Shown here: positions 5,205 to 49,194 of the stretch, piece by piece
How positions within the stretch are numbered: position 1 is the first letter of the stretch
How the letters are laid out: the number at the start of each line of letters is the position of its first letter
Source: Pocillopora damicornis
Lineage: Eukaryota
Assembly (NCBI RefSeq): GCF_003704095.1
Contig: NW_020846595.1
Location: forward strand, 372,001 to 436,000
Direction of reading: 5' to 3'
DNA: 64,000 nucleotides
Notes under the pieces: generated by a model
The model's input: the letters and a program-made list of their open reading frames with translations, nothing else
What the model was told of the DNA's origin: nothing
Database searches by the model: none
Program-made: the position numbers and the translations under genes

Positions 5205-8200
5205 TCACTCTAAAGTCAGTATTTGAAAGTTTGAAGCACAGTCCATAAGCCATGTCGAGGGCATGCTACAAACTGACCGAGGCTTCTTTTCTGCCAGTGA
5301 ATCATAGATGATGAATTGAGTGCATCTGTAATGTTTAGTGTCTGGATCTGCATGGTAAGCAACAGGGGCTAAGGTGACAGAGGCCTTGTTAGATTCAGGA
5401 GTTCTAGGTAAGCAGAGAGATTCATCAATATCTGGTTTCGGTTCACGAGATAAGATTCTGCCTCCACCATATTTGACCAACTGTACTAGATCCTCTTTTG
5501 AAGGTTGAGGAGGGATAAATTCACCATTGAAGAAAAACTGGCATCCATCAAACAAACCAGGAAGCTGGAAAATATAATGAGAAATGAAAAGAGTTGTTTT
5601 GCATGTTATCCACAAAGTGCAAGTTGCAGTCTTAGTCACTCGGTATTTTCATTAAGCTTTTTTCACATTTTGGTTTTTGTCCTCATTTTTTTTTTACCCT
5701 CAATTTTGTTTGGTTTTTTTTTCTTAATTTAAGTACAGCTTTGGTAGAACTTTGGGTACACAAGTTCATCAACCACTTTGCTGCAACACCTTTCTTTTGT
5801 CACTTGGAAATTATAAAAAAATCAAAACATTGTTAATGGCTCTTTCAAGATGTTGAATGTAGTACGTAACCAACCTGCTTCAGAGAATTGATGCGAGCTC
5901 TTTTAGGTGCATCCATCATAGCATCATTGGTACCCTTAACCTCAAAAGGTGTTTCATCTACCCAGGTTTTTCTCTGCAAGCTTTTCAGTATCCCTACATA
6001 GAAGATGAGTGAGACAAATTGAGATTAAAAATTGAACAATAGGCAAGTTTTAGATCATTATTTTGCCAACAATAACTCCCTAAATGCTCTTCTTAATCAG
6101 CCAAGGAAGGCAATTTTCACGGAAAAACAGGAGGTTCTCTTTAGCAGGGACATAAGAATTGTAATATTTATTATGTACATTTGCAATCAAATGTAAGATC
6201 AAATCACCCACTCTGAAGTACTTTTTCTTAGGAGACATGCTTGATATAATCCAGAGATGTGACCTAGGGAAGGNNNNNNNNNNNNNNNNNNNNNNNNNNN
6301 NNNNNNNNNNNNNNNNNNNNNNNNNNNNNNNNNNNNNNNNNNNNNNNNNNNNNNNNNNNNNNNNNNNNNNNNNGGATCCTATAAAATAAGGTCATTGAAG
6401 AGAATTCTTAAACCGAAACCTAAGAGATAGTAAATTGAGTTTCCCACCTGACATTAAGAGCAGCTCCTCTGGAGATCAACAGACTCACTACTTCCACTCT
6501 CCCATTGGTGACTGCATCATGCAGAGGTGTATCATGATCAAACCCTCCAGGAGTGTTAATCATTGCACCATGTTCCAACAGAAGTTCAGTGATGGTAAGA
6601 TAGCCATGGTTACAGGCTTCATGCTGAAGAATAAAATAAAATGCAGGATTTCAAGGTCAGAGATACAACTTAAGGAATAATTGATATCAAGATGAAAATC
6701 ACTATTTGGACAGAGTGTTTCTGTTCTGTAAATATAGGTCACCTAAGATTGGAAGAACAATGAAACAGGTAAGATTTGCCATATTATAGTCAGGAATGTA
6801 ACTCACCAGAGGAGTCCAGCCAGCATGATCTTTGGTGTTAGGATTTGCTCCTCCTGCAAGTAACTTTCTCACGGTTTCCACACAGCCCTATGAAGGTGAT
6901 AATATTAGATAAGAAAAGTTACTAGACATGATCATCAGAGATATGTTATGCATGACAAAAGAAAAAGAAAACTGTATATGACAATAAGGGCTACATGTAA
7001 AGGAGCAAGGATGGTAAAGTGAAAGAATGTACTTGGTTTCCACCATTGTGGCAGAGATTCAATATCCCAAACCTAACATTACTTGTGGGTTTAGTTAACT
7101 GATGGTTCTCATTTTTGGTTTAAGATTTGTTCTCCGAGTTTCCTTCCTCCACAAAAACCAAATCTCCAATTTTTTTTTAATCAGAAATCTGTTTTATCAC
7201 AGTGTACCTTAATGGCAGCCACATGAAGAGGTGTTTCTCCACGTTTATTTCTCTTGACTTCAGGGGGACAGAGAATACAATTCTTTGGGCTGCTTAAAGT
7301 CTGCTCTGACATTTTTCTTTTCCTATTTCCTGCCAGAGATAAATTCATGAACAATGTAAAGTGAATAAGAGAAATAATTCATGACATTTTTATAGGAGCT
7401 ACAGCATATGCTTAAACATGGAGAAGTTTTCAAGGAATAACAGATTGGTAATATTTTTAAAAATGGTCAACTCCTTCATCAAGTGTAAACAATCATTAAA
7501 TTTTTACAGCAGCTGTATTAGCATATTTTAATCTAACCTTGGGACTTCAAAGGAGTTTCTTTGGTATCCTCTGTCTTTTTCTTTTTCATAAGCACCTGCT
7601 CATTGTGGATTCTTTCATTTGTAAGATTTTTTTGCAGCTCATTCTGAGGCAGGGTCCAAAGTGAAGAACTCTGTGGTGTTCCTCTCAAGTTCCTTTTTTG
7701 AGCCCTTGTCCTTGGAGTGCTTTCTACAGCTTTAGGACTCCCTTTATGTGAAGGTCCCTTATTTTGCATCATAACTGAGCCATCAGAAGTAAGTGGACCT
7801 TTTGATCTTAGCCTTGTAAAACATCCTGTGTCAGGGTTCTCTTTGTCTTTTTCTTTATCAGTATTGTTTCCCCCCTCATCTGTAACTTCAAACTGTTCAG
7901 TGACAATATTTTCTGTTAACACGTGATCAGTCTGTCCTTTATTTTCATGAACATCATTTTCTGTGACAACTGGACATGTTTTCTTTATTAATCTTGTTTT
8001 CTTTAAATGTTTTCCAAAACATTTTTTCTTTGCTTGTGTTCTTATCTCATCTTTTGAACTACCTGACAATGAAGTTTCAACAATTTCTTTGAATCCCTGT
8101 CCACTTGCGAGGATCTCATTTGCAGGACATGTTTCACTGTCCTGTTCATCAAGCTCCCTGCAGAGACCTTGTTTTGTAATTTCTTTCCCATTATTATCCC

Positions 8201-36690: not shown

Positions 36691-39600
36691 TCAATTCAAC
36701 TGCCCACAATCTGATATTGCTACTGGCTTTGCTGTTTTGCCAGATTGAGAACCTATCGCTTCCATTTTCCTGACGACATCCATACCCTCCACAACGCTTC
36801 CAAACACAACATGTTTGCCATCCAGCCATGTAGTTTTAGCGGTGCAAATAAAAAACTGTGATCCATTGGTGTTGGCGCCAGCATTGGCCATAGATAGGAT
36901 CCCTAAAATTAAGTATTAATTAACAAACAAAATAAACAAAAGAAAACAAGATACTTTAAAATATATTTTAAGTCTAAGAAAATTAAATCTCACCTTAAAC
37001 ATAAACAAAATCAGAGCAAACACTTACCAGCACCAGTATGCTTTAAGGAAAAGTTTTCATCAGCAAACTTTTCACCATAAATGGATTTGCCACCAGTTCC
37101 ATTGCCATTAGTAAAATCTCCACCCTAGTTAAATATAATGGTTAAAGAAAGTTACATGTGTACATAATGTGCTCAACAGTTGTTTATCCATTACATGATG
37201 GCTGTATCCTTTTAATTCCATTTTTTCATACTGAATGCATGGCTGTCCAAGGGCATTTACAACCTAGCACCATAAATATACTATATTTAAAGAAAATTTG
37301 GGAAGCAGATCCTTAAAATTAAAGAGAAGTGCCTAAGGAGGTTGAAAAGGCTGGCTGGATTTTGATTCCTATCTCAAGAAATTTGCAAATCTGACCAATT
37401 TTTGGCCAAGAAATTCCCAACATGAAAAGGCTGCATTTGCTCTTTATCTATAAATCAATATATAACAACTTGTACCCTATCAGAGACATACTATAACTCA
37501 CTCAATAAGCTACAGTCTGACAGAGACAGTCAAAATCTTAATGTTGAATAAGCTCTTGACATGCATAGAAAGAAGGACATTATGTCTAGAAAACTCATCA
37601 GTATCTGATTTTTTAATTAGCATTTGACTTCTTAATGTTGAAAACCCTTGAACTTCTCTACAACAACAACCTTAAAATAACCAGTGTAAAGAAGAGACTG
37701 TTATGGCAAGGAAGGGGTGTGTACGACAGAAACAATTTTGAACAAATTAAGGGTTACTGTGTGGGACACTTGCTGGGACAAATGAGGAGGTTACTGTGGA
37801 AAGGTGGCCATGAGGGGAAGATCAACTTAATGAGCATAAAAAATGATTTACAGTTTAGTGTTAATAAGAATTGGGTAAGATAATATTTATATTTGTAACT
37901 AAAGCAGTAACAGAAACTTACCTGACACATAAACCCGGGAATGATTCGATGGAATTTACTTCCTTTGTAGCCAAATCCCTTCTCACCAGTGCACAGTGCA
38001 CGGAAGTTCTCTAAAAAGGAATATCATTTAAAAAAAAACATACAATAGCTAAAACTGGGTGAGTCAAAGACAGACCTGTTCAACCCCCTGATCATAGCTT
38101 ATTGGTATCATGAACTTCACTGAACTTCCATACACTAAGCATCACCCAGTCAATAGTGCACCAATAAAAATGGGCACCCAAAGGGTACAAGGGTGTATGT
38201 TGCTCTTCGTTTTTACAATGGGTCTCAAATATCCTCTTATGAGGCTCAGCTCTCCAAGTGGACTTTCTCAAGTGCTGCTTTTAGTTAAAGGGGGCCCTTA
38301 AATACAAGGCAAACCCATACAGGGTTCATTTTGCTGAGCTAAAGGTGATGTGGCTGGAAGCAATCAAGGGTGATGTGACTCATGAAACCAGTAGTGCAGC
38401 CATGACATGTTACCAATTACTAGTAGACTGTTACTTCAGACCAGAAAAAAGCTACCAGCATTAGGCTTATCCCTGAGTAAATAGGTCATTGAATGCTGTA
38501 ATAAATGTAATGATTGTGCACCTAAAATCAAAATTACCACTTTCCTGATGAAATTGAGTTTGACTCTTATAAAAGCACCCAAAAGTAAATGATGCGAACA
38601 AACATAAAATTTTAAGTGGCTGTGGGCTACTGAACTCAGAAAAGGAATTATAAAGGGATGAAATATTAAGGCCACTGAATTAAAACTTTTGGTCCATTCA
38701 CTGACAGCACGTGGTTTGTCTCAAATCACATTTGCTCCCTTGGCACAGAAGGTTGTGCCTCTCCTCGCAAGTAAAGGGCCAGGATTCAACTCAAGACAGT
38801 AGCAAAATATTTTTTTCTCTTTCTTTTTCCTTTTGTTCCCCTGTTTTTAAATGTATTCTTCAAAAGCATGTTTTTTCTGTTTTCATCCAGAACGTCACCT
38901 TTTTCTGAGCAGAAATCAGCATTCAAGAAGCCAATTACCAAAGCAAATTGTTTGTCTTTCCTCTTCTGCTCTTGGAAAAAAGGTGTGGTTTTAAACATTT
39001 AAGAATATAGTTCATCAATATTTCGTTTTTTTGGCGATCAAGTGTTCAAATTCTGGATTGACAAGGTTTTAAAACAAGGCCTACAAATACTGAAATGTTA
39101 GACAACTTGTCACCCTTGAAAGTAATTTATCCAAGCACCTTGTATGCGCAGAATTTGTTTAAACCTTGTTTCAGACCTTATGCACTCAGTCTTAATTTTC
39201 ATCAATTTTCAGCCATTAGTAAAATTATCTGGTCTCAGATCTTAGCTGTTGGTTAAGTACACATTCTTCCTCAGCAGACTGCTATCAGCTGAGCCCCAAG
39301 CAGGAACTTAAAATGAACACGCAAAATCCCTATACACTAGCGGGTAAATAGTTGACAGGAGTGGAAAGGAGTGACTAAGTGATGGTTTCAAGGAGTGAAA
39401 TTTGCTTTCTGCCATTCTCCCAAATAAGTTACTGTAACAATGTCTGCATGTGTAAGGCCGCTAAAAATGATAGGAATGTTCACAGTCTGACTCCATGACA
39501 AGGAGTCTACATTGCCTTGAGCACCATTGACTCAGAAACTAAAAAAACCATTGGATTACTGTAGGCCTTGGCAAGAAAGACTAACCCTTACAAATTCTTC

Positions 39601-41659: not shown

Positions 41660-42004
41660 CTACAATTTCCTTCATAGAGCAGGGGGCCCTACAGACTTTC
41701 ATCTTTAAAATTCATCAACATTGAGAAGGTTACAAGTGTTAATTGCCTACTAAAATTTAACATCACTGTGACCTTTTGAAACGCATGCGCATGAGGATGG
41801 TCCTAAATTTACCCGAATTGTAATAATTGCCATAAAATTTCAAATAGCGCAGTAACAACCACCACAGGTAGTTACGATACGAATTCTCCCAGGATCTCAG
41901 TTCGTTACCTCAATGCTGCACAAAATCAACAATCTCACTACCACATGTCTGTGAAATCCGAGATACAACGAAAATATTAATGGACTTGGTGGCTCCTCGT
42001 ATCC
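41660..42004 (+). promoter_or_regulatory. Putative type-3 Pol III (snRNA-type) upstream promoter of the 7SK gene
   Basis: TATTAA at -30..-25 (41975-41980). TCACTACCACATGTCTGTGAAA lies at the PSE position (~41935-41956). SPH/ZNF143-like TTCTCCCAGGATCTCAG at 41884-41900 and CTACAATTTCC at 41660-41670. NRF1-like ACGCATGCGCATG at 41781-41793. Confidence 0.55.
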
Positions 42005-42298
42005 GGAAGCGTAGGGTGCTATTACAGATATCTCCATCGCATCGCCCTCGTGGCTGATCTGGTGATATCCGTAACAGCTCTGGTTCGGTACCCTTTCTAG
42101 GAGTCCAATGCCAACCCAAAATTCCATATTCAGTCACTCCCGATGCTTCGCGCTCGGTGGAGAGACACCTTCACACACCTAACAGGAGTGTTTCGGTATA
42201 AACGTATCCTCGTTGCGCTCGCCTAAATTTGTAGGATACTGACTTAGTCAGTGATATCGCTTCCAGTGGCACTACAAGTGGTAGTATGCCATTGTTTT
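42005..42298 (+). ncRNA. RN7SK: 7SK small nuclear RNA (~294 nt)
   Basis: 5' GGAAGCG (42005-11) pairs with CGCTTCC (42258-64). AGGGTGC/GTACCCT form a stem (42013-19/42088-94). The 5' hairpin is CCATCGCATCGCC-CTCGT-GGCTGATCTGG (42034-62). CTCCCGATGCTTCGCGCTCGG lies at 42137-57. The 3' hairpin TGGCA-CTAC-AAGTG-GTAG-TA-TGCCA (42267-91) is followed by TTGTTTT. The blocks are collinear with human 7SK as I recall it. Confidence 0.92.
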
Positions 42299-42304
42299 GA
42301 TTTT
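42295..42304 (+). terminator. Pol III oligo-T terminator (TTTT, with a backup TTTT)
   Basis: TTTT at 42295-98 directly after the 3' hairpin, and a second TTTT at 42301-04. Confidence 0.75.
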
Positions 42305-42602
42305 ACTGTAGTAATATTAAGACCGAGAAGTTGGTATCCATAATTAGCTTTCGCAAGCCGATCGCTAGTACTCGTAATACACTTCTGGATCTTCCCCGTC
42401 CTACTTTGCCTTCTATCTTTCAAACTGGTCAGAAAATTTTCTTCGTGAAACAGCATACTTTTGTCTCTATTACCATTTTTTTGAATTTTTTCGTCAAAAT
42501 AGATACGAGTAATGTCGAGAACAGAACGATTAATCGACTGGCAAAACAACCTTACTTGACCCCACACGGGTACAAATATCCAGAGGTACTGGGTCCTATC
42601 AG

Positions 42603-42640
42603 ACGCATGCGTGATCTTGACTGATCCTCTTTCTCTATCC
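42603..42640 (+). promoter_or_regulatory. RPL23 core promoter: NRF1-like palindrome and TCT/5'TOP pyrimidine tract
   Basis: ACGCATGCGT at 42603-12 and CCTCTTTCTCT at 42626-36, just upstream of the ATG, as is typical for ribosomal protein genes. Confidence 0.7.
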
Positions 42641-42643
42641 AAC

Positions 42644-45472
<2,829 letters not shown>

Positions 45473-47694: not shown

Positions 47695-48894
47695 CTAAAG
47701 AGTTGGTGCTCGCCTTTCCATAGCACGAGTGTTCTCTGGCCGGATTTGCACACCTTGAAAGGGGCGCCTTCTTTTAATGAAATCCTTAACTGCCTTCTTA
47801 AATTCAGAACTCCGAAAGCTGTACAAAACAGGGTTAATGGCTGAGTTAAGATAACCCAACATAAGAAAGAAAGTAAGCAATTCATGATGCTTTGCGATAT
47901 CGATAGCACATTTCCAACATAGAATGGACGTGATGCTCAGAAATGAGTGAGGCAACCAACAGACCACGAACGAGAAAACGATCAGAAACGTTGTCCTGGC
48001 TGCACGAATGTTCCGTTGTTGTAATTTCCTGATGTGGATGGCTTCATGTCGCGATCGTATAGATTCGACAGGTTGTTGTTCTGAGGTAGGTGAATTGGAG
48101 CTCTCTTGGACTGAATTAAGCCTTGCTGCGTTTTCAATGCCTCCTGGTTCCGCTACTGAAACTTTCCCTCTCTTTGCTCTGAATCCAGTCATGTGTTTAG
48201 TTTTTCCAGTTCTGCGGCCAGTTTTTGGAGCATGCGTCCGCTTGACTGCAACGCAAAACATTTTGCAGTTCAGAAAGGAAGCGATTAAAACTGGTATCAC
48301 AAAATTTATGAACGAACTTAACACCGAATAAGTTAAAGAGATGTTGAAATGACAGTATTCACGATAAACACTTCTTGGATGCGGTTTCCAGCCAAAGACT
48401 GGGGCGAGTGAAAAGAGCACGGAGTATGCCCATAAACAGCAAACGACTATAGAGGCGCGCCTGCGAGTCATCAGTGGCGATGCCTTGTAGATGTCCAGAG
48501 GTTCTTGTAGGAGTCGGTATCGATAAACTGTCAAAGCCAACAAGCTTAGAATGGACGTGGGTACAGCAAATAAGTACGTTGTCGTCCATACATTGCACAT
48601 GATCTCACCATGTCTCCAGGGCTTGAATGAAATGATTATCTCTAAGTCAAATGGCATCACCAGACAAGTTGTTATCAGATCAGAAACTGCCAAGGAGAGT
48701 GTGAAGAACGTGTTGATGGATTGCCGCAGGGATCTGGTGATTAGTGTGACCACACAAACTGTGATATTTCCCATTAGCGAGGCGATGATAATGATGACGT
48801 AAAATATGGAACATGTGACCATAATTGGTGAGACATCAAGATTTTCAATGGCTGGCGAAGCAGTCGAGTTTATCGCATTTTCTGACTCATTCAT
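47695..48894 (-). CDS. Class A GPCR, biogenic-amine-receptor-like (copy 1)
   Basis: Intronless 7TM ORF starting MNESEN: GN in TM1, SLAVSD in TM2, C..W in TM3, YRY in place of DRY, CWLP in TM6, NSAINPVLY in TM7 and FKKA in helix 8. A splice acceptor lies ~30 nt upstream of the ATG. Confidence 0.92.
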   Translation of the reverse strand: MNESENAINSTASPAIENLDVSPIMVTCSIFYVIIIIASLMGNITVCVVTLITRSLRQSINTFFTLSLAVSDLITTCLVMPFDLEIIISFKPWRHGEIMCNVWTTTYLFAVPTSILSLLALTVYRYRLLQEPLDIYKASPLMTRRRASIVVCCLWAYSVLFSLAPVFGWKPHPRSVYREYCHFNISLTYSVLSSFINFVIPVLIASFLNCKMFCVAVKRTHAPKTGRRTGKTKHMTGFRAKRGKVSVAEPGGIENAARLNSVQESSNSPTSEQQPVESIRSRHEAIHIRKLQQRNIRAARTTFLIVFSFVVCWLPHSFLSITSILCWKCAIDIAKHHELLTFFLMLGYLNSAINPVLYSFRSSEFKKAVKDFIKRRRPFQGVQIRPENTRAMERRAPTL

Positions 48895-49194
48895 GGCGAA
48901 TAAGAACCCTTTTTTCCTCGCTAGGCCTGAAAAAATGGAAAACGTAAGAGACATTGCTGGCTGTGACAATTACAAATATACATATATGTACTGACATCTG
49001 ATTGGCTGAAACCAAAGTCAAAGGTTGCATGAATAAAACGAGATTTTCGCTGACAGTTTTAATCTTTTTAACAAGTTCGGTAAGTGACCAGGCCATCATT
49101 TTAAAATAAATTTAAAATGTATTGGTGAACTTATACTGTCAACTGGTAATCAAGAATGATCTCAGATAAAAGCTTAAAATAGACTATTGAGGTG

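What the first reader, a model, noticed from the sequence alone, without database searches (positions are those of the whole stretch)
42005..42298. Unannotated, structurally complete 7SK snRNA gene in a probable cnidarian (coral) genome
Seen in sequence: (1) The 5' end GGAAGCG pairs with CGCTTCC at 42258-64, the closing M1 helix. (2) AGGGTGC pairs with GTACCCT. (3) A long 5' hairpin runs GCT/TTAC/GATATC/CCA/G(C)ATC/GCC-loop-GGC/T/GATC/TGG/GATATC/GTAA/AGC (42018-42078). (4) There is a GTATCCT/AGGATAC stem at 42204-39. (5) The 3' hairpin TGGCA-CTAC-AAGTG-GTAG-TA-TGCCA is followed by TTTT. Established knowledge (human 7SK recalled from memory): CCAUUGAUCGCC...GGCUGAUCUGG (HEXIM/P-TEFb stem), CUCCCGAAGCUGCGCGCUCGG (19/21 identical to 42137-57), UGCGCUC, AUUUGUAGGA and the LARP7 hairpin AGGCG-CUGC-AUGUG-GCAG-UC-UGCCU occur in the same order here, with compensatory stem changes. 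Inference: this is a functional 7SK gene. 7SK is well described in bilaterians and I know of no validated cnidarian example. It would imply that the 7SK/HEXIM/LARP7/MePCE control of P-TEFb predates the cnidarian-bilaterian split. The novelty and the taxon both need checking.
Basis: partly seen in the sequence, partly recalled or inferred. Interest (0 to 1): 0.95.

Follow-up and report, generated by a model that had tools for sequence, protein, structure and literature searches.

The report
Coral 7SK small nuclear RNA gene
[quoted passage not shown] It extends a system described so far in bilaterian animals to corals, where it was expected but, as far as I could check, not documented.

Summary
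Window 42005-42298 (+) is a 294-nt 7SK snRNA gene.

- **Family match:** Rfam 7SK scores it 34.0 bits, 1 bit under the cut-off (E 2.6e-7). It is the only such match in the 234-Mb genome.
- **Promoter:** It has a U6-type Pol III promoter, with a TATA-like box at -31, a PSE-like box at -66 and a CGCATGCG element at -223. It ends in a T-run.
- **Expression:** Contigs of 266-299 nt from three separate RNA studies cover the gene and not its flanks.
- **Relatives:** Full-length copies in two other coral lineages (85-90% identical) keep the gene body and the three promoter boxes, while the flanks diverge.
- **Second gene:** The same genome holds a diverged second 7SK gene on another contig, with the same promoter layout.
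- **Structure:** Ten sequences give 9 compensatory base pairs, against 2.3 in shuffles.
- **Protein partners:** HEXIM (with the KHRR-like and PYNT motifs), MePCE and LARP7 (with its xRRM helix) are all encoded in this genome.

The nearest named HEXIM relatives are sea anemones and the sequencing runs are labelled coral, so the cnidarian assignment holds.

No paper I could search reports a cnidarian 7SK. Key papers and the Rfam, RNAcentral and NCBI annotations could not be read, so novelty is probable but not proven. All copies score below Rfam's cut-offs, which would explain a missing annotation. Binding to P-TEFb is inferred, not shown.

The parts
41779..41791 (+). Distal promoter element AAACGCATGCGCA (core palindrome CGCATGCG at 41782-41789, position -223).
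   Evidence: The same 8-mer lies at -206 to -229 upstream of 10 of the 11 coral 7SK copies compared, whose flanks are otherwise unalignable; the eleventh, L023b, carries a one-base variant. It lies at -223 of the second 7SK gene, -210 of RNase P and -107 of U6 in this genome. The window holds 3 copies against 0.08 expected.
41938..41959 (+). PSE-like proximal element (CTACCACATGTCTGTGAAATCC, TACCAC at -66).
   Evidence: It is conserved as yTACCACAAg..AGrAAT in all coral 7SK copies while the surrounding sequence diverges. A TmCCAy block sits at -65 to -68 in U6, U6atac, RNase P and the second 7SK gene of the same genome.
41974..41981 (+). TATA-like box ATATTAAT (-31 to -24).
   Evidence: An equivalent ATATATAAA lies at -32 to -25 in the orthologues. 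AT-rich boxes sit at about -30 in U6, U6atac, RNase MRP and RNase P of this genome.
42005..42298 (+). 7SK snRNA gene (7SK-A), predicted RNA of about 291-294 nt.
   Evidence: RF00100 scores 34.0 bits, E 2.6e-7. My own covariance model R1 scores 329.7 bits end to end. Conservation against L015 starts exactly at 42005 and ends at the T-run. RNA-library contigs span 41983-42281, 42014-42282 and 42016-42281.
42005..42011 (+). 5' strand of the closing helix M1 (GGAAGCG). It pairs with 42258-42264.
   Evidence: There are 7 base pairs, invariant in 9 of 10 sequences. They align to the closing helix of RF01052 in the relatives.
42018..42078 (+). 5' hairpin (SL1 equivalent). Its apical part at 42034-42062 carries CCAUCG-C-AUCGCC opposite GGCUGAUCUGG, the putative HEXIM-binding site.
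   Evidence: Every fold predicts it. It has 4 compensatory pairs. The 3' strand GGCUGAUCUGG is invariant. The extra nucleotide inside the 5' GAUC is C in three lineages and U in the second gene, and the Rfam model treats it as an insertion.
42137..42157 (+). Conserved M3 block CUCCCGAUGCUUCGCGCUCGG, forming a small hairpin.
   Evidence: It aligns with high posterior probability to the RF00100 consensus. The helix is kept, with one compensatory pair in the enclosing stem.
42204..42239 (+). Internal hairpin GUAUCCU ... AGGAUAC.
   Evidence: The 7-bp stem is invariant in all 10 sequences. Its loop differs in sequence and length (26 nt against 30 nt) between the two paralogues.
42258..42264 (+). 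3' strand of the closing helix M1 (CGCUUCC).
42267..42291 (+). 3' hairpin (SL4 equivalent, putative LARP7 xRRM site) with a 2-nt bulge.
   Evidence: One pair changes A-U to G-C or G-U, and further changes preserve wobble pairs across lineages. It aligns to the 3' hairpin of both Rfam models.
42295..42298 (+). T-run, the Pol III terminator and U-rich 3' end.
   Evidence: A run of four or more T directly follows the hairpin in every copy, and conservation stops there.

Best explanation
Window 42005-42298 (+) is one of two 7SK snRNA genes of a scleractinian coral.

**Transcription (shown by sequence and comparison).** It is an independent snRNA-type (type 3) RNA polymerase III unit. It has a distal CGCATGCG element at about -223, a PSE-like box at about -66 and a TATA-like box at -31. 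Transcription starts at the G of GGAAGCG and terminates in the T-run after the 3' hairpin. This gives a non-coding RNA of about 290 nt that appears as a discrete unit in RNA libraries.

**Fold (shown by comparison).** The RNA adopts the closed 7SK architecture. The 5' end pairs with a segment just before the 3' hairpin. A long 5' hairpin presents a G(y)AUC/GAUC duplex flanked by bulged pyrimidines. The conserved M3 hairpin follows. A bulged 3' hairpin precedes the U-tail.

**Function (inferred from homology, not shown).** By analogy with the human and Drosophila 7SK snRNP:
- MePCE caps the 5' gamma-phosphate.
- LARP7 binds the U-tail and the 3' hairpin through its La module and xRRM.
- A HEXIM dimer binds the GAUC region of the 5' hairpin through its KHRR-like basic patch. 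This exposes its PYNT motif, which inhibits CDK9/cyclin T.

The RNA would therefore act as a reversible store of inactive P-TEFb that tunes release of paused RNA polymerase II.
For: **Family match.**
- RF00100 scores 34.0 bits, E 2.6e-7, and is the only genome-wide match.
- The relatives align end to end to RF01052 at 38-43 bits, E 1e-7 to 1e-9. The alignment includes the closing helix, the GAUC hairpin and the 3' hairpin.

**Promoter.**
- TATA-like, PSE-like and distal elements sit at the same distances as in U6, U6atac, RNase P and the second 7SK gene of the same genome.
- The three elements are conserved in 11 coral copies that lie in different flanks.

**Expression.**
- Ten RNA-labelled runs from at least five studies hold the sequence.
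- Contigs from three studies cover 42014-42282 or so, with zero depth in 200 nt of flank on either side.

**Conservation.**
- Against L015, identity jumps from about 50% to over 90% exactly at +1 and drops again after the T-run.
- Across three lineages, 13 of 180 paired columns vary against 36 of 110 unpaired columns (Fisher p 3.6e-8).

**Covariation.**
- Nine pairs changed on both sides, against 2.3 +/- 1.0 in shuffles (0 of 500 reached 9) and 1-4 when the partners were slid.
- 96.9% of cells form a standard pair.

**Protein partners in the same genome.**
- HEXIM scores 133.5 bits, carries KKHRRGSRR and PYNTTQYLM, and has a cyclin-T-binding domain matching human HEXIM1.
- A MePCE exon matches human MePCE at 1e-29.
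- The LARP7 La-motif exon has LARP7 as its best PDB match. Its C-terminal exon has significant PDB matches only to LARP7 xRRM structures.
Against: - The score is below the curated cut-off of both Rfam 7SK families (34.0 against 35; 38-43 against 44).
- For the window sequence, the RF00100 model skipped the 5' hairpin in its alignment.
- The 5' GAUC is interrupted by an extra nucleotide. Whether HEXIM tolerates this is untested.
- Expression rests on assembled contigs, which cannot show true ends, strand or abundance.
  - One contig starts 22 nt upstream of the proposed start.
  - All three stop about 15 nt before the T-run.
  - The one raw-read run gave no reads.
- Most compensatory changes come from a single paralogue, and the alignment was fitted to a structure derived from the same sequences.
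- All relatives found are probably scleractinians. No sea anemone, octocoral or hydrozoan copy was found.
- No binding, capping or P-TEFb inhibition was tested.
Confidence: 0.9

Rival explanations
1. The locus is a 7SK-derived paralogue that is transcribed but no longer works in P-TEFb control. The diverged second gene on contig C2698 would be the working 7SK, or the two would have split functions. The second 7SK-like RNA of Drosophila is a precedent.
For: - Two full-length 7SK genes exist in this genome.
- The second scores higher on RF01052 (43.3 bits).
- Truncated 7SK-derived copies exist in another coral lineage, so the family does spawn non-functional copies.
Against: - The window copy is the one seen in RNA libraries.
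- It has full-length orthologues at 85-90% identity with intact promoters in two other lineages.
- Its substitutions avoid paired positions.
- All functional motifs are intact.
- Expression of the second gene was not tested.
Confidence: 0.06
2. The locus encodes an unrelated structured Pol III small RNA that only resembles 7SK by convergence. A long 5' hairpin, a 3' hairpin and a U-tail are common features of Pol III RNAs.
For: - The score is below the Rfam cut-offs.
- The central part of the RNA aligns poorly to either model.
Against: - The matches are specific to the two 7SK families, and no other Rfam family matches.
- They include primary-sequence blocks that are 7SK signatures. These are GGCUGAUCUGG opposite AUCGCC, the M3 block, the closing helix GGAAG...CUUCC, and the 3' hairpin GGCACUGC...GCAGU.UGCC with its 2-nt bulge.
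- E-values are 1e-7 to 1e-9.
Confidence: 0.03
3. The sequence is contamination of the coral assembly by DNA of a bilaterian associate.
For: Coral samples are holobionts that carry many associated animals.
Against: - The gene sits 1.1 kb upstream of an RPL23 gene whose first coding exon is identical or near-identical in proteins called on public (including Tara coral metagenome) contigs.
- The same 7SK-RPL23 arrangement is found in another coral lineage.
- Its promoter boxes match those of U6, U6atac and RNase P elsewhere in the genome.
- Several coded organisms and coral-labelled runs hold it.
Confidence: 0.01

Closest known systems
7SK RNA of vertebrates and other deuterostomes and lophotrochozoans (Rfam RF00100)
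   Same: - It has the same order of elements: closing helix, 5' hairpin with GAUC motifs, M3 block (19 of 21 positions as in the consensus), and a 3' hairpin with a 2-nt bulge and U-tail.
- It has a Pol III type 3 promoter with TATA, PSE and a distal element near -220.
- Its length is about 290-330 nt.
- The partner proteins HEXIM, LARP7 and MePCE are present.
   Different: - It scores 1 bit under the family cut-off.
- One extra pyrimidine sits inside the 5' GAUC.
- The apical loop of the 5' hairpin is shorter (5-6 nt).
- The central domain is not alignable.
- The distal element is a CGCATGCG palindrome, not the octamer/Staf elements of vertebrate genes (the vertebrate elements are from my own knowledge).
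Arthropod 7SK RNA (Rfam RF01052)
   Same: The coral relatives and the second gene align end to end, over positions 1-351 of the model. The closing helix GGAAGnG...CnCUUCC, CAUUG.AUCGC...GAUCUG and GGCACUGC..GCAGU.UGCC-AUUcUUUU are matched almost letter for letter.
   Different: - The score is 38-43 bits against a cut-off of 44.
- The coral RNAs are about 60 nt shorter than the model.
- The interior is mostly gaps and insertions.
Second 7SK-like RNA of Drosophila (snRNA:7SK:94F, PMC8406779)
   Same: It is a precedent for two diverged 7SK-type genes in one genome.
   Different: The paper argues that the fly paralogue is not a Pol III gene, because it has internal T-runs. Both coral genes have complete Pol III type 3 promoters and a terminal T-run.
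U6 / U6atac / RNase P / RNase MRP genes of the same genome (Pol III type 3 class)
   Same: They share the promoter grammar: a TATA-like box near -30 in all, a TmCCAy box near -65 in U6, U6atac and RNase P, and CGCATGCG upstream of U6 and RNase P.
   Different: Their RNAs are unrelated. Each is matched above cut-off by its own Rfam family.

Membership tests
7SK snRNA (Rfam clan CL00013: RF00100, RF01052) | Covariance-model score at or above the curated gathering cut-off. | tested here: inconclusive
   - The window scores 34.0 against 35 bits (RF00100), E 2.6e-7.
- The relatives score 38.1-43.3 against 44 bits (RF01052), E 1e-7 to 1e-9.
- All are statistically significant but under the curators' line. 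No other family matches.
7SK snRNA | 5' hairpin presenting two GAUC motifs with flanking bulged U (the HEXIM/Tat binding site). | tested here: met
   - The 3' strand GGCUGAUCUGG is exact and invariant.
- The 5' strand CCAU(C/G)G-y-AUCGCC keeps the G...AUC pairing with one extra bulged pyrimidine.
- The 2-nt bulge and the single U bulge are kept.
- The variant is conserved in all lineages.
7SK snRNA | 3' terminal hairpin with a 2-nt bulge, followed by a U-run (the LARP7 site). | tested here: met
   The hairpin at 42267-42291 and TTTT at 42295-42298 are present. Pair changes are compensatory or keep wobble pairs. It aligns to both models.
7SK snRNA | Closing helix between the 5' end and the segment before the 3' hairpin (M1), plus the conserved M3 block. 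| tested here: met
   M1 has 7 bp, essentially invariant. M3 at 42137-42157 aligns with high posterior probability to RF00100.
7SK snRNA | Transcription by RNA polymerase III from an upstream type 3 (U6-like) promoter, with termination at a T-run. | tested here: met
   The sequence signature is present only: TATA-like at -31, PSE-like at -66, distal element at -223, and a T-run. All are shared with known Pol III genes of the genome and conserved across copies. Polymerase usage itself was not tested.
7SK snRNA | Discrete, abundant nuclear RNA of about 300 nt. | tested here: inconclusive
   Discrete 266-299-nt contigs appear in three RNA studies with silent flanks. Contigs cannot give ends, strand, abundance or localisation, and the raw-read run gave no reads.
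7SK snRNP | Presence of HEXIM with a basic RNA-binding patch and the PYNT motif. | tested here: met
   PF15313 scores 133.5 bits. The open reading frame carries KKHRRGSRR and PYNTTQYLM. The cyclin-T-binding region matches human HEXIM1 2GD7.
7SK snRNP | Presence of MePCE and LARP7. | tested here: met
   - The MePCE exon matches 5UNA/6DCB at 1e-29, against 3.7e-5 for BCDIN3D.
- The first LARP7 La-motif exon has LARP7 as its best PDB match; the second exon is ambiguous between La and LARP7.
- The LARP7 C-terminal exon has significant PDB matches only to LARP7 xRRM entries 5KNW, 6D12 and 7SLP.
7SK snRNP | RNA-dependent binding of HEXIM and inhibition of CDK9/cyclin T; gamma-monomethyl 5' cap. | not testable with these tools
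   These need biochemistry (RIP/CLIP, EMSA, kinase assay, cap analysis).

The most novel reading that the evidence does not exclude
These would be the first documented cnidarian 7SK RNAs: two paralogous genes in one coral and orthologues in at least two other coral lineages.

- They would show directly that the RNA scaffold of the 7SK/HEXIM/LARP7/MePCE brake on P-TEFb already existed in the cnidarian-bilaterian ancestor.
- They carry a conserved variant of the HEXIM site, G-y-AUC.
- They use a so far undescribed CGCATGCG distal element shared by the two 7SK genes, U6 and RNase P.
Probability: 0.5. Interest if true: 0.7.

Novelty: new member of a known kind. Interest (0 to 1): 0.58.

Why it matters
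**The gap it fills.** 7SK evolves so fast that it has been hard to find outside vertebrates. Papers I could read place it in bilaterians (PMC8406779) and list it as missing from Trichoplax (PMC2655684). HEXIM, LARP7 and MePCE are known to be older (bioRxiv 10.1101/2023.02.19.529146; PMC10848712).

**What the coral genes add.**
- A bona fide cnidarian 7SK dates the complete RNA-protein system to before the cnidarian-bilaterian split.
- The sequences give seeds for covariance models that can find 7SK in sea anemones, jellyfish and perhaps sponges.
- Current Rfam models miss every coral copy by 1-6 bits.
- The origin of regulated promoter-proximal pause release becomes testable in tractable cnidarians.

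**How surprising it is.** The result was expected by specialists, so it is a useful confirmation rather than a surprise.

Tried and rejected
- **Rfam at gathering threshold** on the whole window gave nothing. The match appears only at E-value threshold.
- **Synteny route.** RPL23 neighbourhoods of other corals and of the sea anemone Exaiptasia (L012-L014, L016-L022, L060-L067) hold no 7SK. I checked by nhmmer (all of these) and by my own covariance model (8 of them). The 7SK-RPL23 adjacency is kept only in the L015-type lineage.
- **First metagenome pattern.** The pattern GGCTGATCTGG, a 60-90 nt gap, then the M3 block found nothing. A second, M3-only pattern worked.
- **Translated pseudo-ORF search.** It gave a single hit, which led to L023. 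I judged it too insensitive for distant cnidarians and did not repeat it.
- **PF08777 (xRRM) search of the genome** found only a generic RRM protein. LARP7 had to be found through the La motif and PDB comparison.
- **U2 search** of the genome found nothing. Pol II snRNA promoters could therefore not be compared.
- **Raw-read run X20** gave no reads on the locus, so RNA ends and strand could not be read.
- **Papers not held.** Marz 2009, Gruber 2008 and Yazbeck 2018 are not in the library.
- **Bacterial promoter and terminator scan** is uninformative here.
- **Typed dot-bracket structure.** I did not type one. I used the structure stored with the model alignment instead.

Full report
**What is in the sequence.**
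- GGAAGCG (42005-42011) is complementary to CGCTTCC (42258-42264).
- A long imperfect hairpin spans 42018-42078.
- GTATCCT (42204-42210) pairs with AGGATAC (42233-42239).
- A bulged hairpin (42267-42291) is followed by TTTT (42295-42298).

The single-sequence fold has an energy of -93.1 kcal/mol, z = -2.9 against dinucleotide shuffles. It reproduces the closing helix, the 5' hairpin and the 3' hairpin. The folds prefer GGGU with ACCC at 42114-42117. Both partners are invariant, so comparison cannot decide between them.

**Family assignment.**
- At Rfam's gathering thresholds the window has no match.
- At E-value threshold the only meaningful match is RF00100 (7SK) at 42100-42295. It scores 34.0 bits against a cut-off of 35, E 2.6e-7.
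- That alignment places the M3 block and the 3' hairpin with high posterior probability but skips the 5' hairpin.
- Genome-wide (234.35 Mb, 4393 contigs) this is the only RF00100 match (E 2.1e-5).
- The relatives found later align end to end to RF01052 (arthropod 7SK) at 38.1-43.3 bits against a cut-off of 44, E 1e-7 to 1e-9.
- In those alignments the closing helix, the CAUUG.AUCGC / GAUCUG hairpin and the GGCACUGC..GCAGU.UGCC-AUUcUUUU end are matched nearly letter for letter.

Every coral copy falls just under both curated cut-offs. That is a sufficient reason for pipelines that use those cut-offs to leave the gene unannotated.

**Promoter.** I located U6, U6atac, RNase MRP and RNase P in the same genome with Rfam models and compared their upstream regions with the candidate's.
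- All five have an AT-rich TATA-like box near -30. In the candidate it is ATATTAAT at -31 to -24.
- Four have a TmCCAy block at -65 to -68. In the candidate it is TACCAC at -66.
- The 8-mer palindrome CGCATGCG lies at -223 (7SK), -210 (RNase P) and -107 (U6).
- This 8-mer occurs 3 times in the 64-kb window against 0.08 expected.

This is the layout of snRNA-type (type 3) Pol III genes, which have a TATA box, a proximal element and a distal element. That layout is established knowledge for vertebrate U6 and 7SK.

**Expression.**
- The 294-nt sequence is held by 19 listed public runs. Ten are recorded as RNA, from at least five studies, and several are labelled coral metagenome.
- I laid four RNA runs on 41805-42504. 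Three gave one contig each: 41983-42281 (299 nt), 42014-42282 (269 nt) and 42016-42281 (266 nt), all identical to the window.
- Depth was zero over the roughly 180-200 nt of flank on both sides. The silent flanks serve as the control against DNA carry-over.

There are several limits.
- Contigs cannot show ends, strand or level.
- One contig begins 22 nt upstream of the proposed start.
- All three end about 15 nt short of the T-run.
- The raw-read run gave no reads.

**Relatives.** I reached other corals by three routes.
- *RPL23 neighbour.* RPL23 lies 1.1 kb downstream (exon about 43440-43640). Looking up contigs that encode RPL23 homologues led to L015:8633-8925. It is 88.6% identical, in the same orientation, upstream of RPL23.
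- *Antisense pseudo-ORF.* A translated antisense open reading frame led to L023, which has two tandem copies 3.4 kb apart, about 85% identical to the window.
- *Metagenome pattern.* A pattern of the M3 block, degenerate so as to exclude the human sequence, found 29 metagenome contigs. Six hold full-length copies of the L015 type in at least three different flanks.

Against L015, identity is about 50% upstream, rises to over 90% exactly at 42005, and falls again after the T-run. The only upstream islands of conservation are the PSE-like and TATA-like boxes. Across all copies the flanks are unalignable. Even so, 10 of 11 keep CGCATGCG at -206 to -229 (the eleventh, L023b, has a one-base variant). 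All keep yTACCACAAg..AGrAAT near -66, ATATATAAA at -32 to -25 and a T-run after the hairpin.

**A second gene.**
- A DNA search of the genome found a 70%-identical match to the 3' half on contig C2698.
- It is a complete 288-289-nt 7SK gene. Its ends are G000:C2698:444205-444492 (-) by the covariance model, one base longer by Rfam (L059 1788 to 1500). It scores 43.3 bits on RF01052, E 1.2e-9.
- It has its own CGCATGCG at -223, TCCCAT at -65 and TATATAAA at -34.
- A covariance model built here (R1) finds exactly these two loci in the genome.

**Structure.**
- Among three lineages, 13 of 180 paired columns vary against 36 of 110 unpaired columns (Fisher p 3.6e-8).
- I used ten sequences aligned to R1. 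Of their cells, 96.9% form a standard pair.
- Nine pairs have changes on both sides, against 2.3 +/- 1.0 in shuffles (0 of 500 reach 9) and 1-4 when partners are slid by 1-3 columns.
- Four of the compensatory pairs are in the 5' hairpin, one is in the stem around M3 and one is in the 3' hairpin.
- The GUAUCCU/AGGAUAC stem is invariant, while its loop differs in sequence and length between the paralogues.

Two caveats apply. The structure was derived from these sequences, and most double changes come from the one diverged paralogue.

**The HEXIM site.** The 3' strand GGCUGAUCUGG is invariant and is exactly the motif that the Rfam consensus carries. The 5' strand reads CCAU(C/G)G-C-AUCGCC in three lineages and CCAUGG-U-AUCGCC in the second gene. 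The G...AUC pairing is kept, with one extra bulged pyrimidine. The Rfam model treats that nucleotide as an insertion. This agrees with the separate first-stage note s1-775541 and adds that the bulge is conserved.

**Partners and taxon.**
- *HEXIM.* PF15313 matches two loci (133.5 and 74.2 bits). The first open reading frame carries KKHRRGSRR and PYNTTQYLM, and the second carries PQNTTQFIM. [quoted passage not shown]
- *Taxon.* The nearest named HEXIM relatives are Nematostella, Actinia and Actinostola at 45-52% identity. Unnamed closer ones reach 98%. This places the genome in Hexacorallia.
- *MePCE.* A Bin3-domain exon matches human MePCE at 1e-29, against 3.7e-5 for BCDIN3D.
- *LARP7.* A La-motif gene on C3564 has LARP7 as the best PDB match for its first La exon. 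Its C-terminal exon (..YWEKINADR..REKKRGTEKV) has significant PDB matches only to LARP7 xRRM structures.

I did not verify that.

**Mechanism.** The shown steps are the gene anatomy, the promoter grammar, the conservation, the structural covariation, the presence in RNA libraries and the presence of the partner genes. The inferred steps come from the human and Drosophila 7SK snRNP: Pol III transcription, MePCE capping, LARP7 binding to the U-tail and 3' hairpin, HEXIM binding to the 5' hairpin, and sequestration of CDK9/cyclin T.

**Novelty.**
- Ten full-text searches found no report of a cnidarian 7SK RNA.
- PMC2655684 lists 7SK among the RNAs not found in Trichoplax.
- PMC10848712 says evidence for 7SK in Trichoplax exists, citing Marz 2009, which I could not read.
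- The preprint 10.1101/2023.02.19.529146 traces only the proteins.
- I could not consult Rfam full alignments, RNAcentral or genome annotations.

I therefore rate it a new member of a known kind. The gene was expected and is not surprising, but it is useful.

Noticed in passing
G000:C2698:444205-444492 (-); L059:1501-1788 (Rfam extends it by one base, to 1500): There is a second, diverged 7SK gene in the same genome, about 70% identical to the window gene in the 3' half. It has its own CGCATGCG (-223), PSE-like (-65) and TATA (-34) boxes and a T-run. It scores 43.3 bits on RF01052. Its expression was not tested.
   Followed up: partly
window 41782-41789; L006 (RNase P) at -210; L002 (U6) at -107; all coral 7SK loci at -206 to -229: The palindrome CGCATGCG (often ACTACGCATGCGYA) sits at a fixed distance upstream of the 7SK genes. 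It also sits upstream of RNase P and U6. It is a candidate distal promoter element of cnidarian snRNA-type genes. A third copy at window 42604-42611 lies upstream of RPL23.
   Followed up: partly
L023:2443-2737 (-) and 5830-6124 (-): Another coral lineage (ENA ERZ25071792 contig) carries a tandem duplication of 7SK, 3.4 kb apart and 98% identical. Each copy has its own promoter boxes. A tRNA gene lies at 6839-6911.
   Followed up: partly
L025-L052 (metagenome contigs): Many contigs carry 100%-identical fragments of the L015-type 7SK joined at variable breakpoints to unrelated sequence, some of it coding-looking. L030, L039 and L048 share the A69G change (L030 and L039 also A20G), and L030 and L039 have lost the 5' end. 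These are either assembly chimeras of an abundant RNA or DNA, or a family of truncated 7SK pseudogenes.
   Followed up: no
L007 (C2648:257325-257753) and L008 (C1129:629855-630208): The genome has two intron-less HEXIM genes. One has the canonical PYNT motif. The other reads PQNT and has a different basic patch.
   Followed up: no
L009 (C1986:700334-700591, -) and L010 (C1986:696157-696360, +): The MePCE methyltransferase exon has an inverted near-copy 4 kb away that carries an in-frame TAG. It is probably a pseudo-exon or a recent broken duplicate.
   Followed up: no
window 41983-42004: One RNA-library contig (run X1, depth 5) extends 22 nt upstream of the proposed 7SK start, right up to the TATA-like box. 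It may reflect a minor upstream start, read-through or trace DNA.
   Followed up: no
window 36691-36891 (-), 43392-43661 (+), 47695-48969 (-): The neighbouring genes are a cyclophilin A (PPIA-type) last exon, the first coding exon of RPL23, and an intron-less rhodopsin-type GPCR. The RPL23-GPCR adjacency is kept in at least three other coral contig sets (L016, L022, L060) that lack 7SK at this place.
   Followed up: partly
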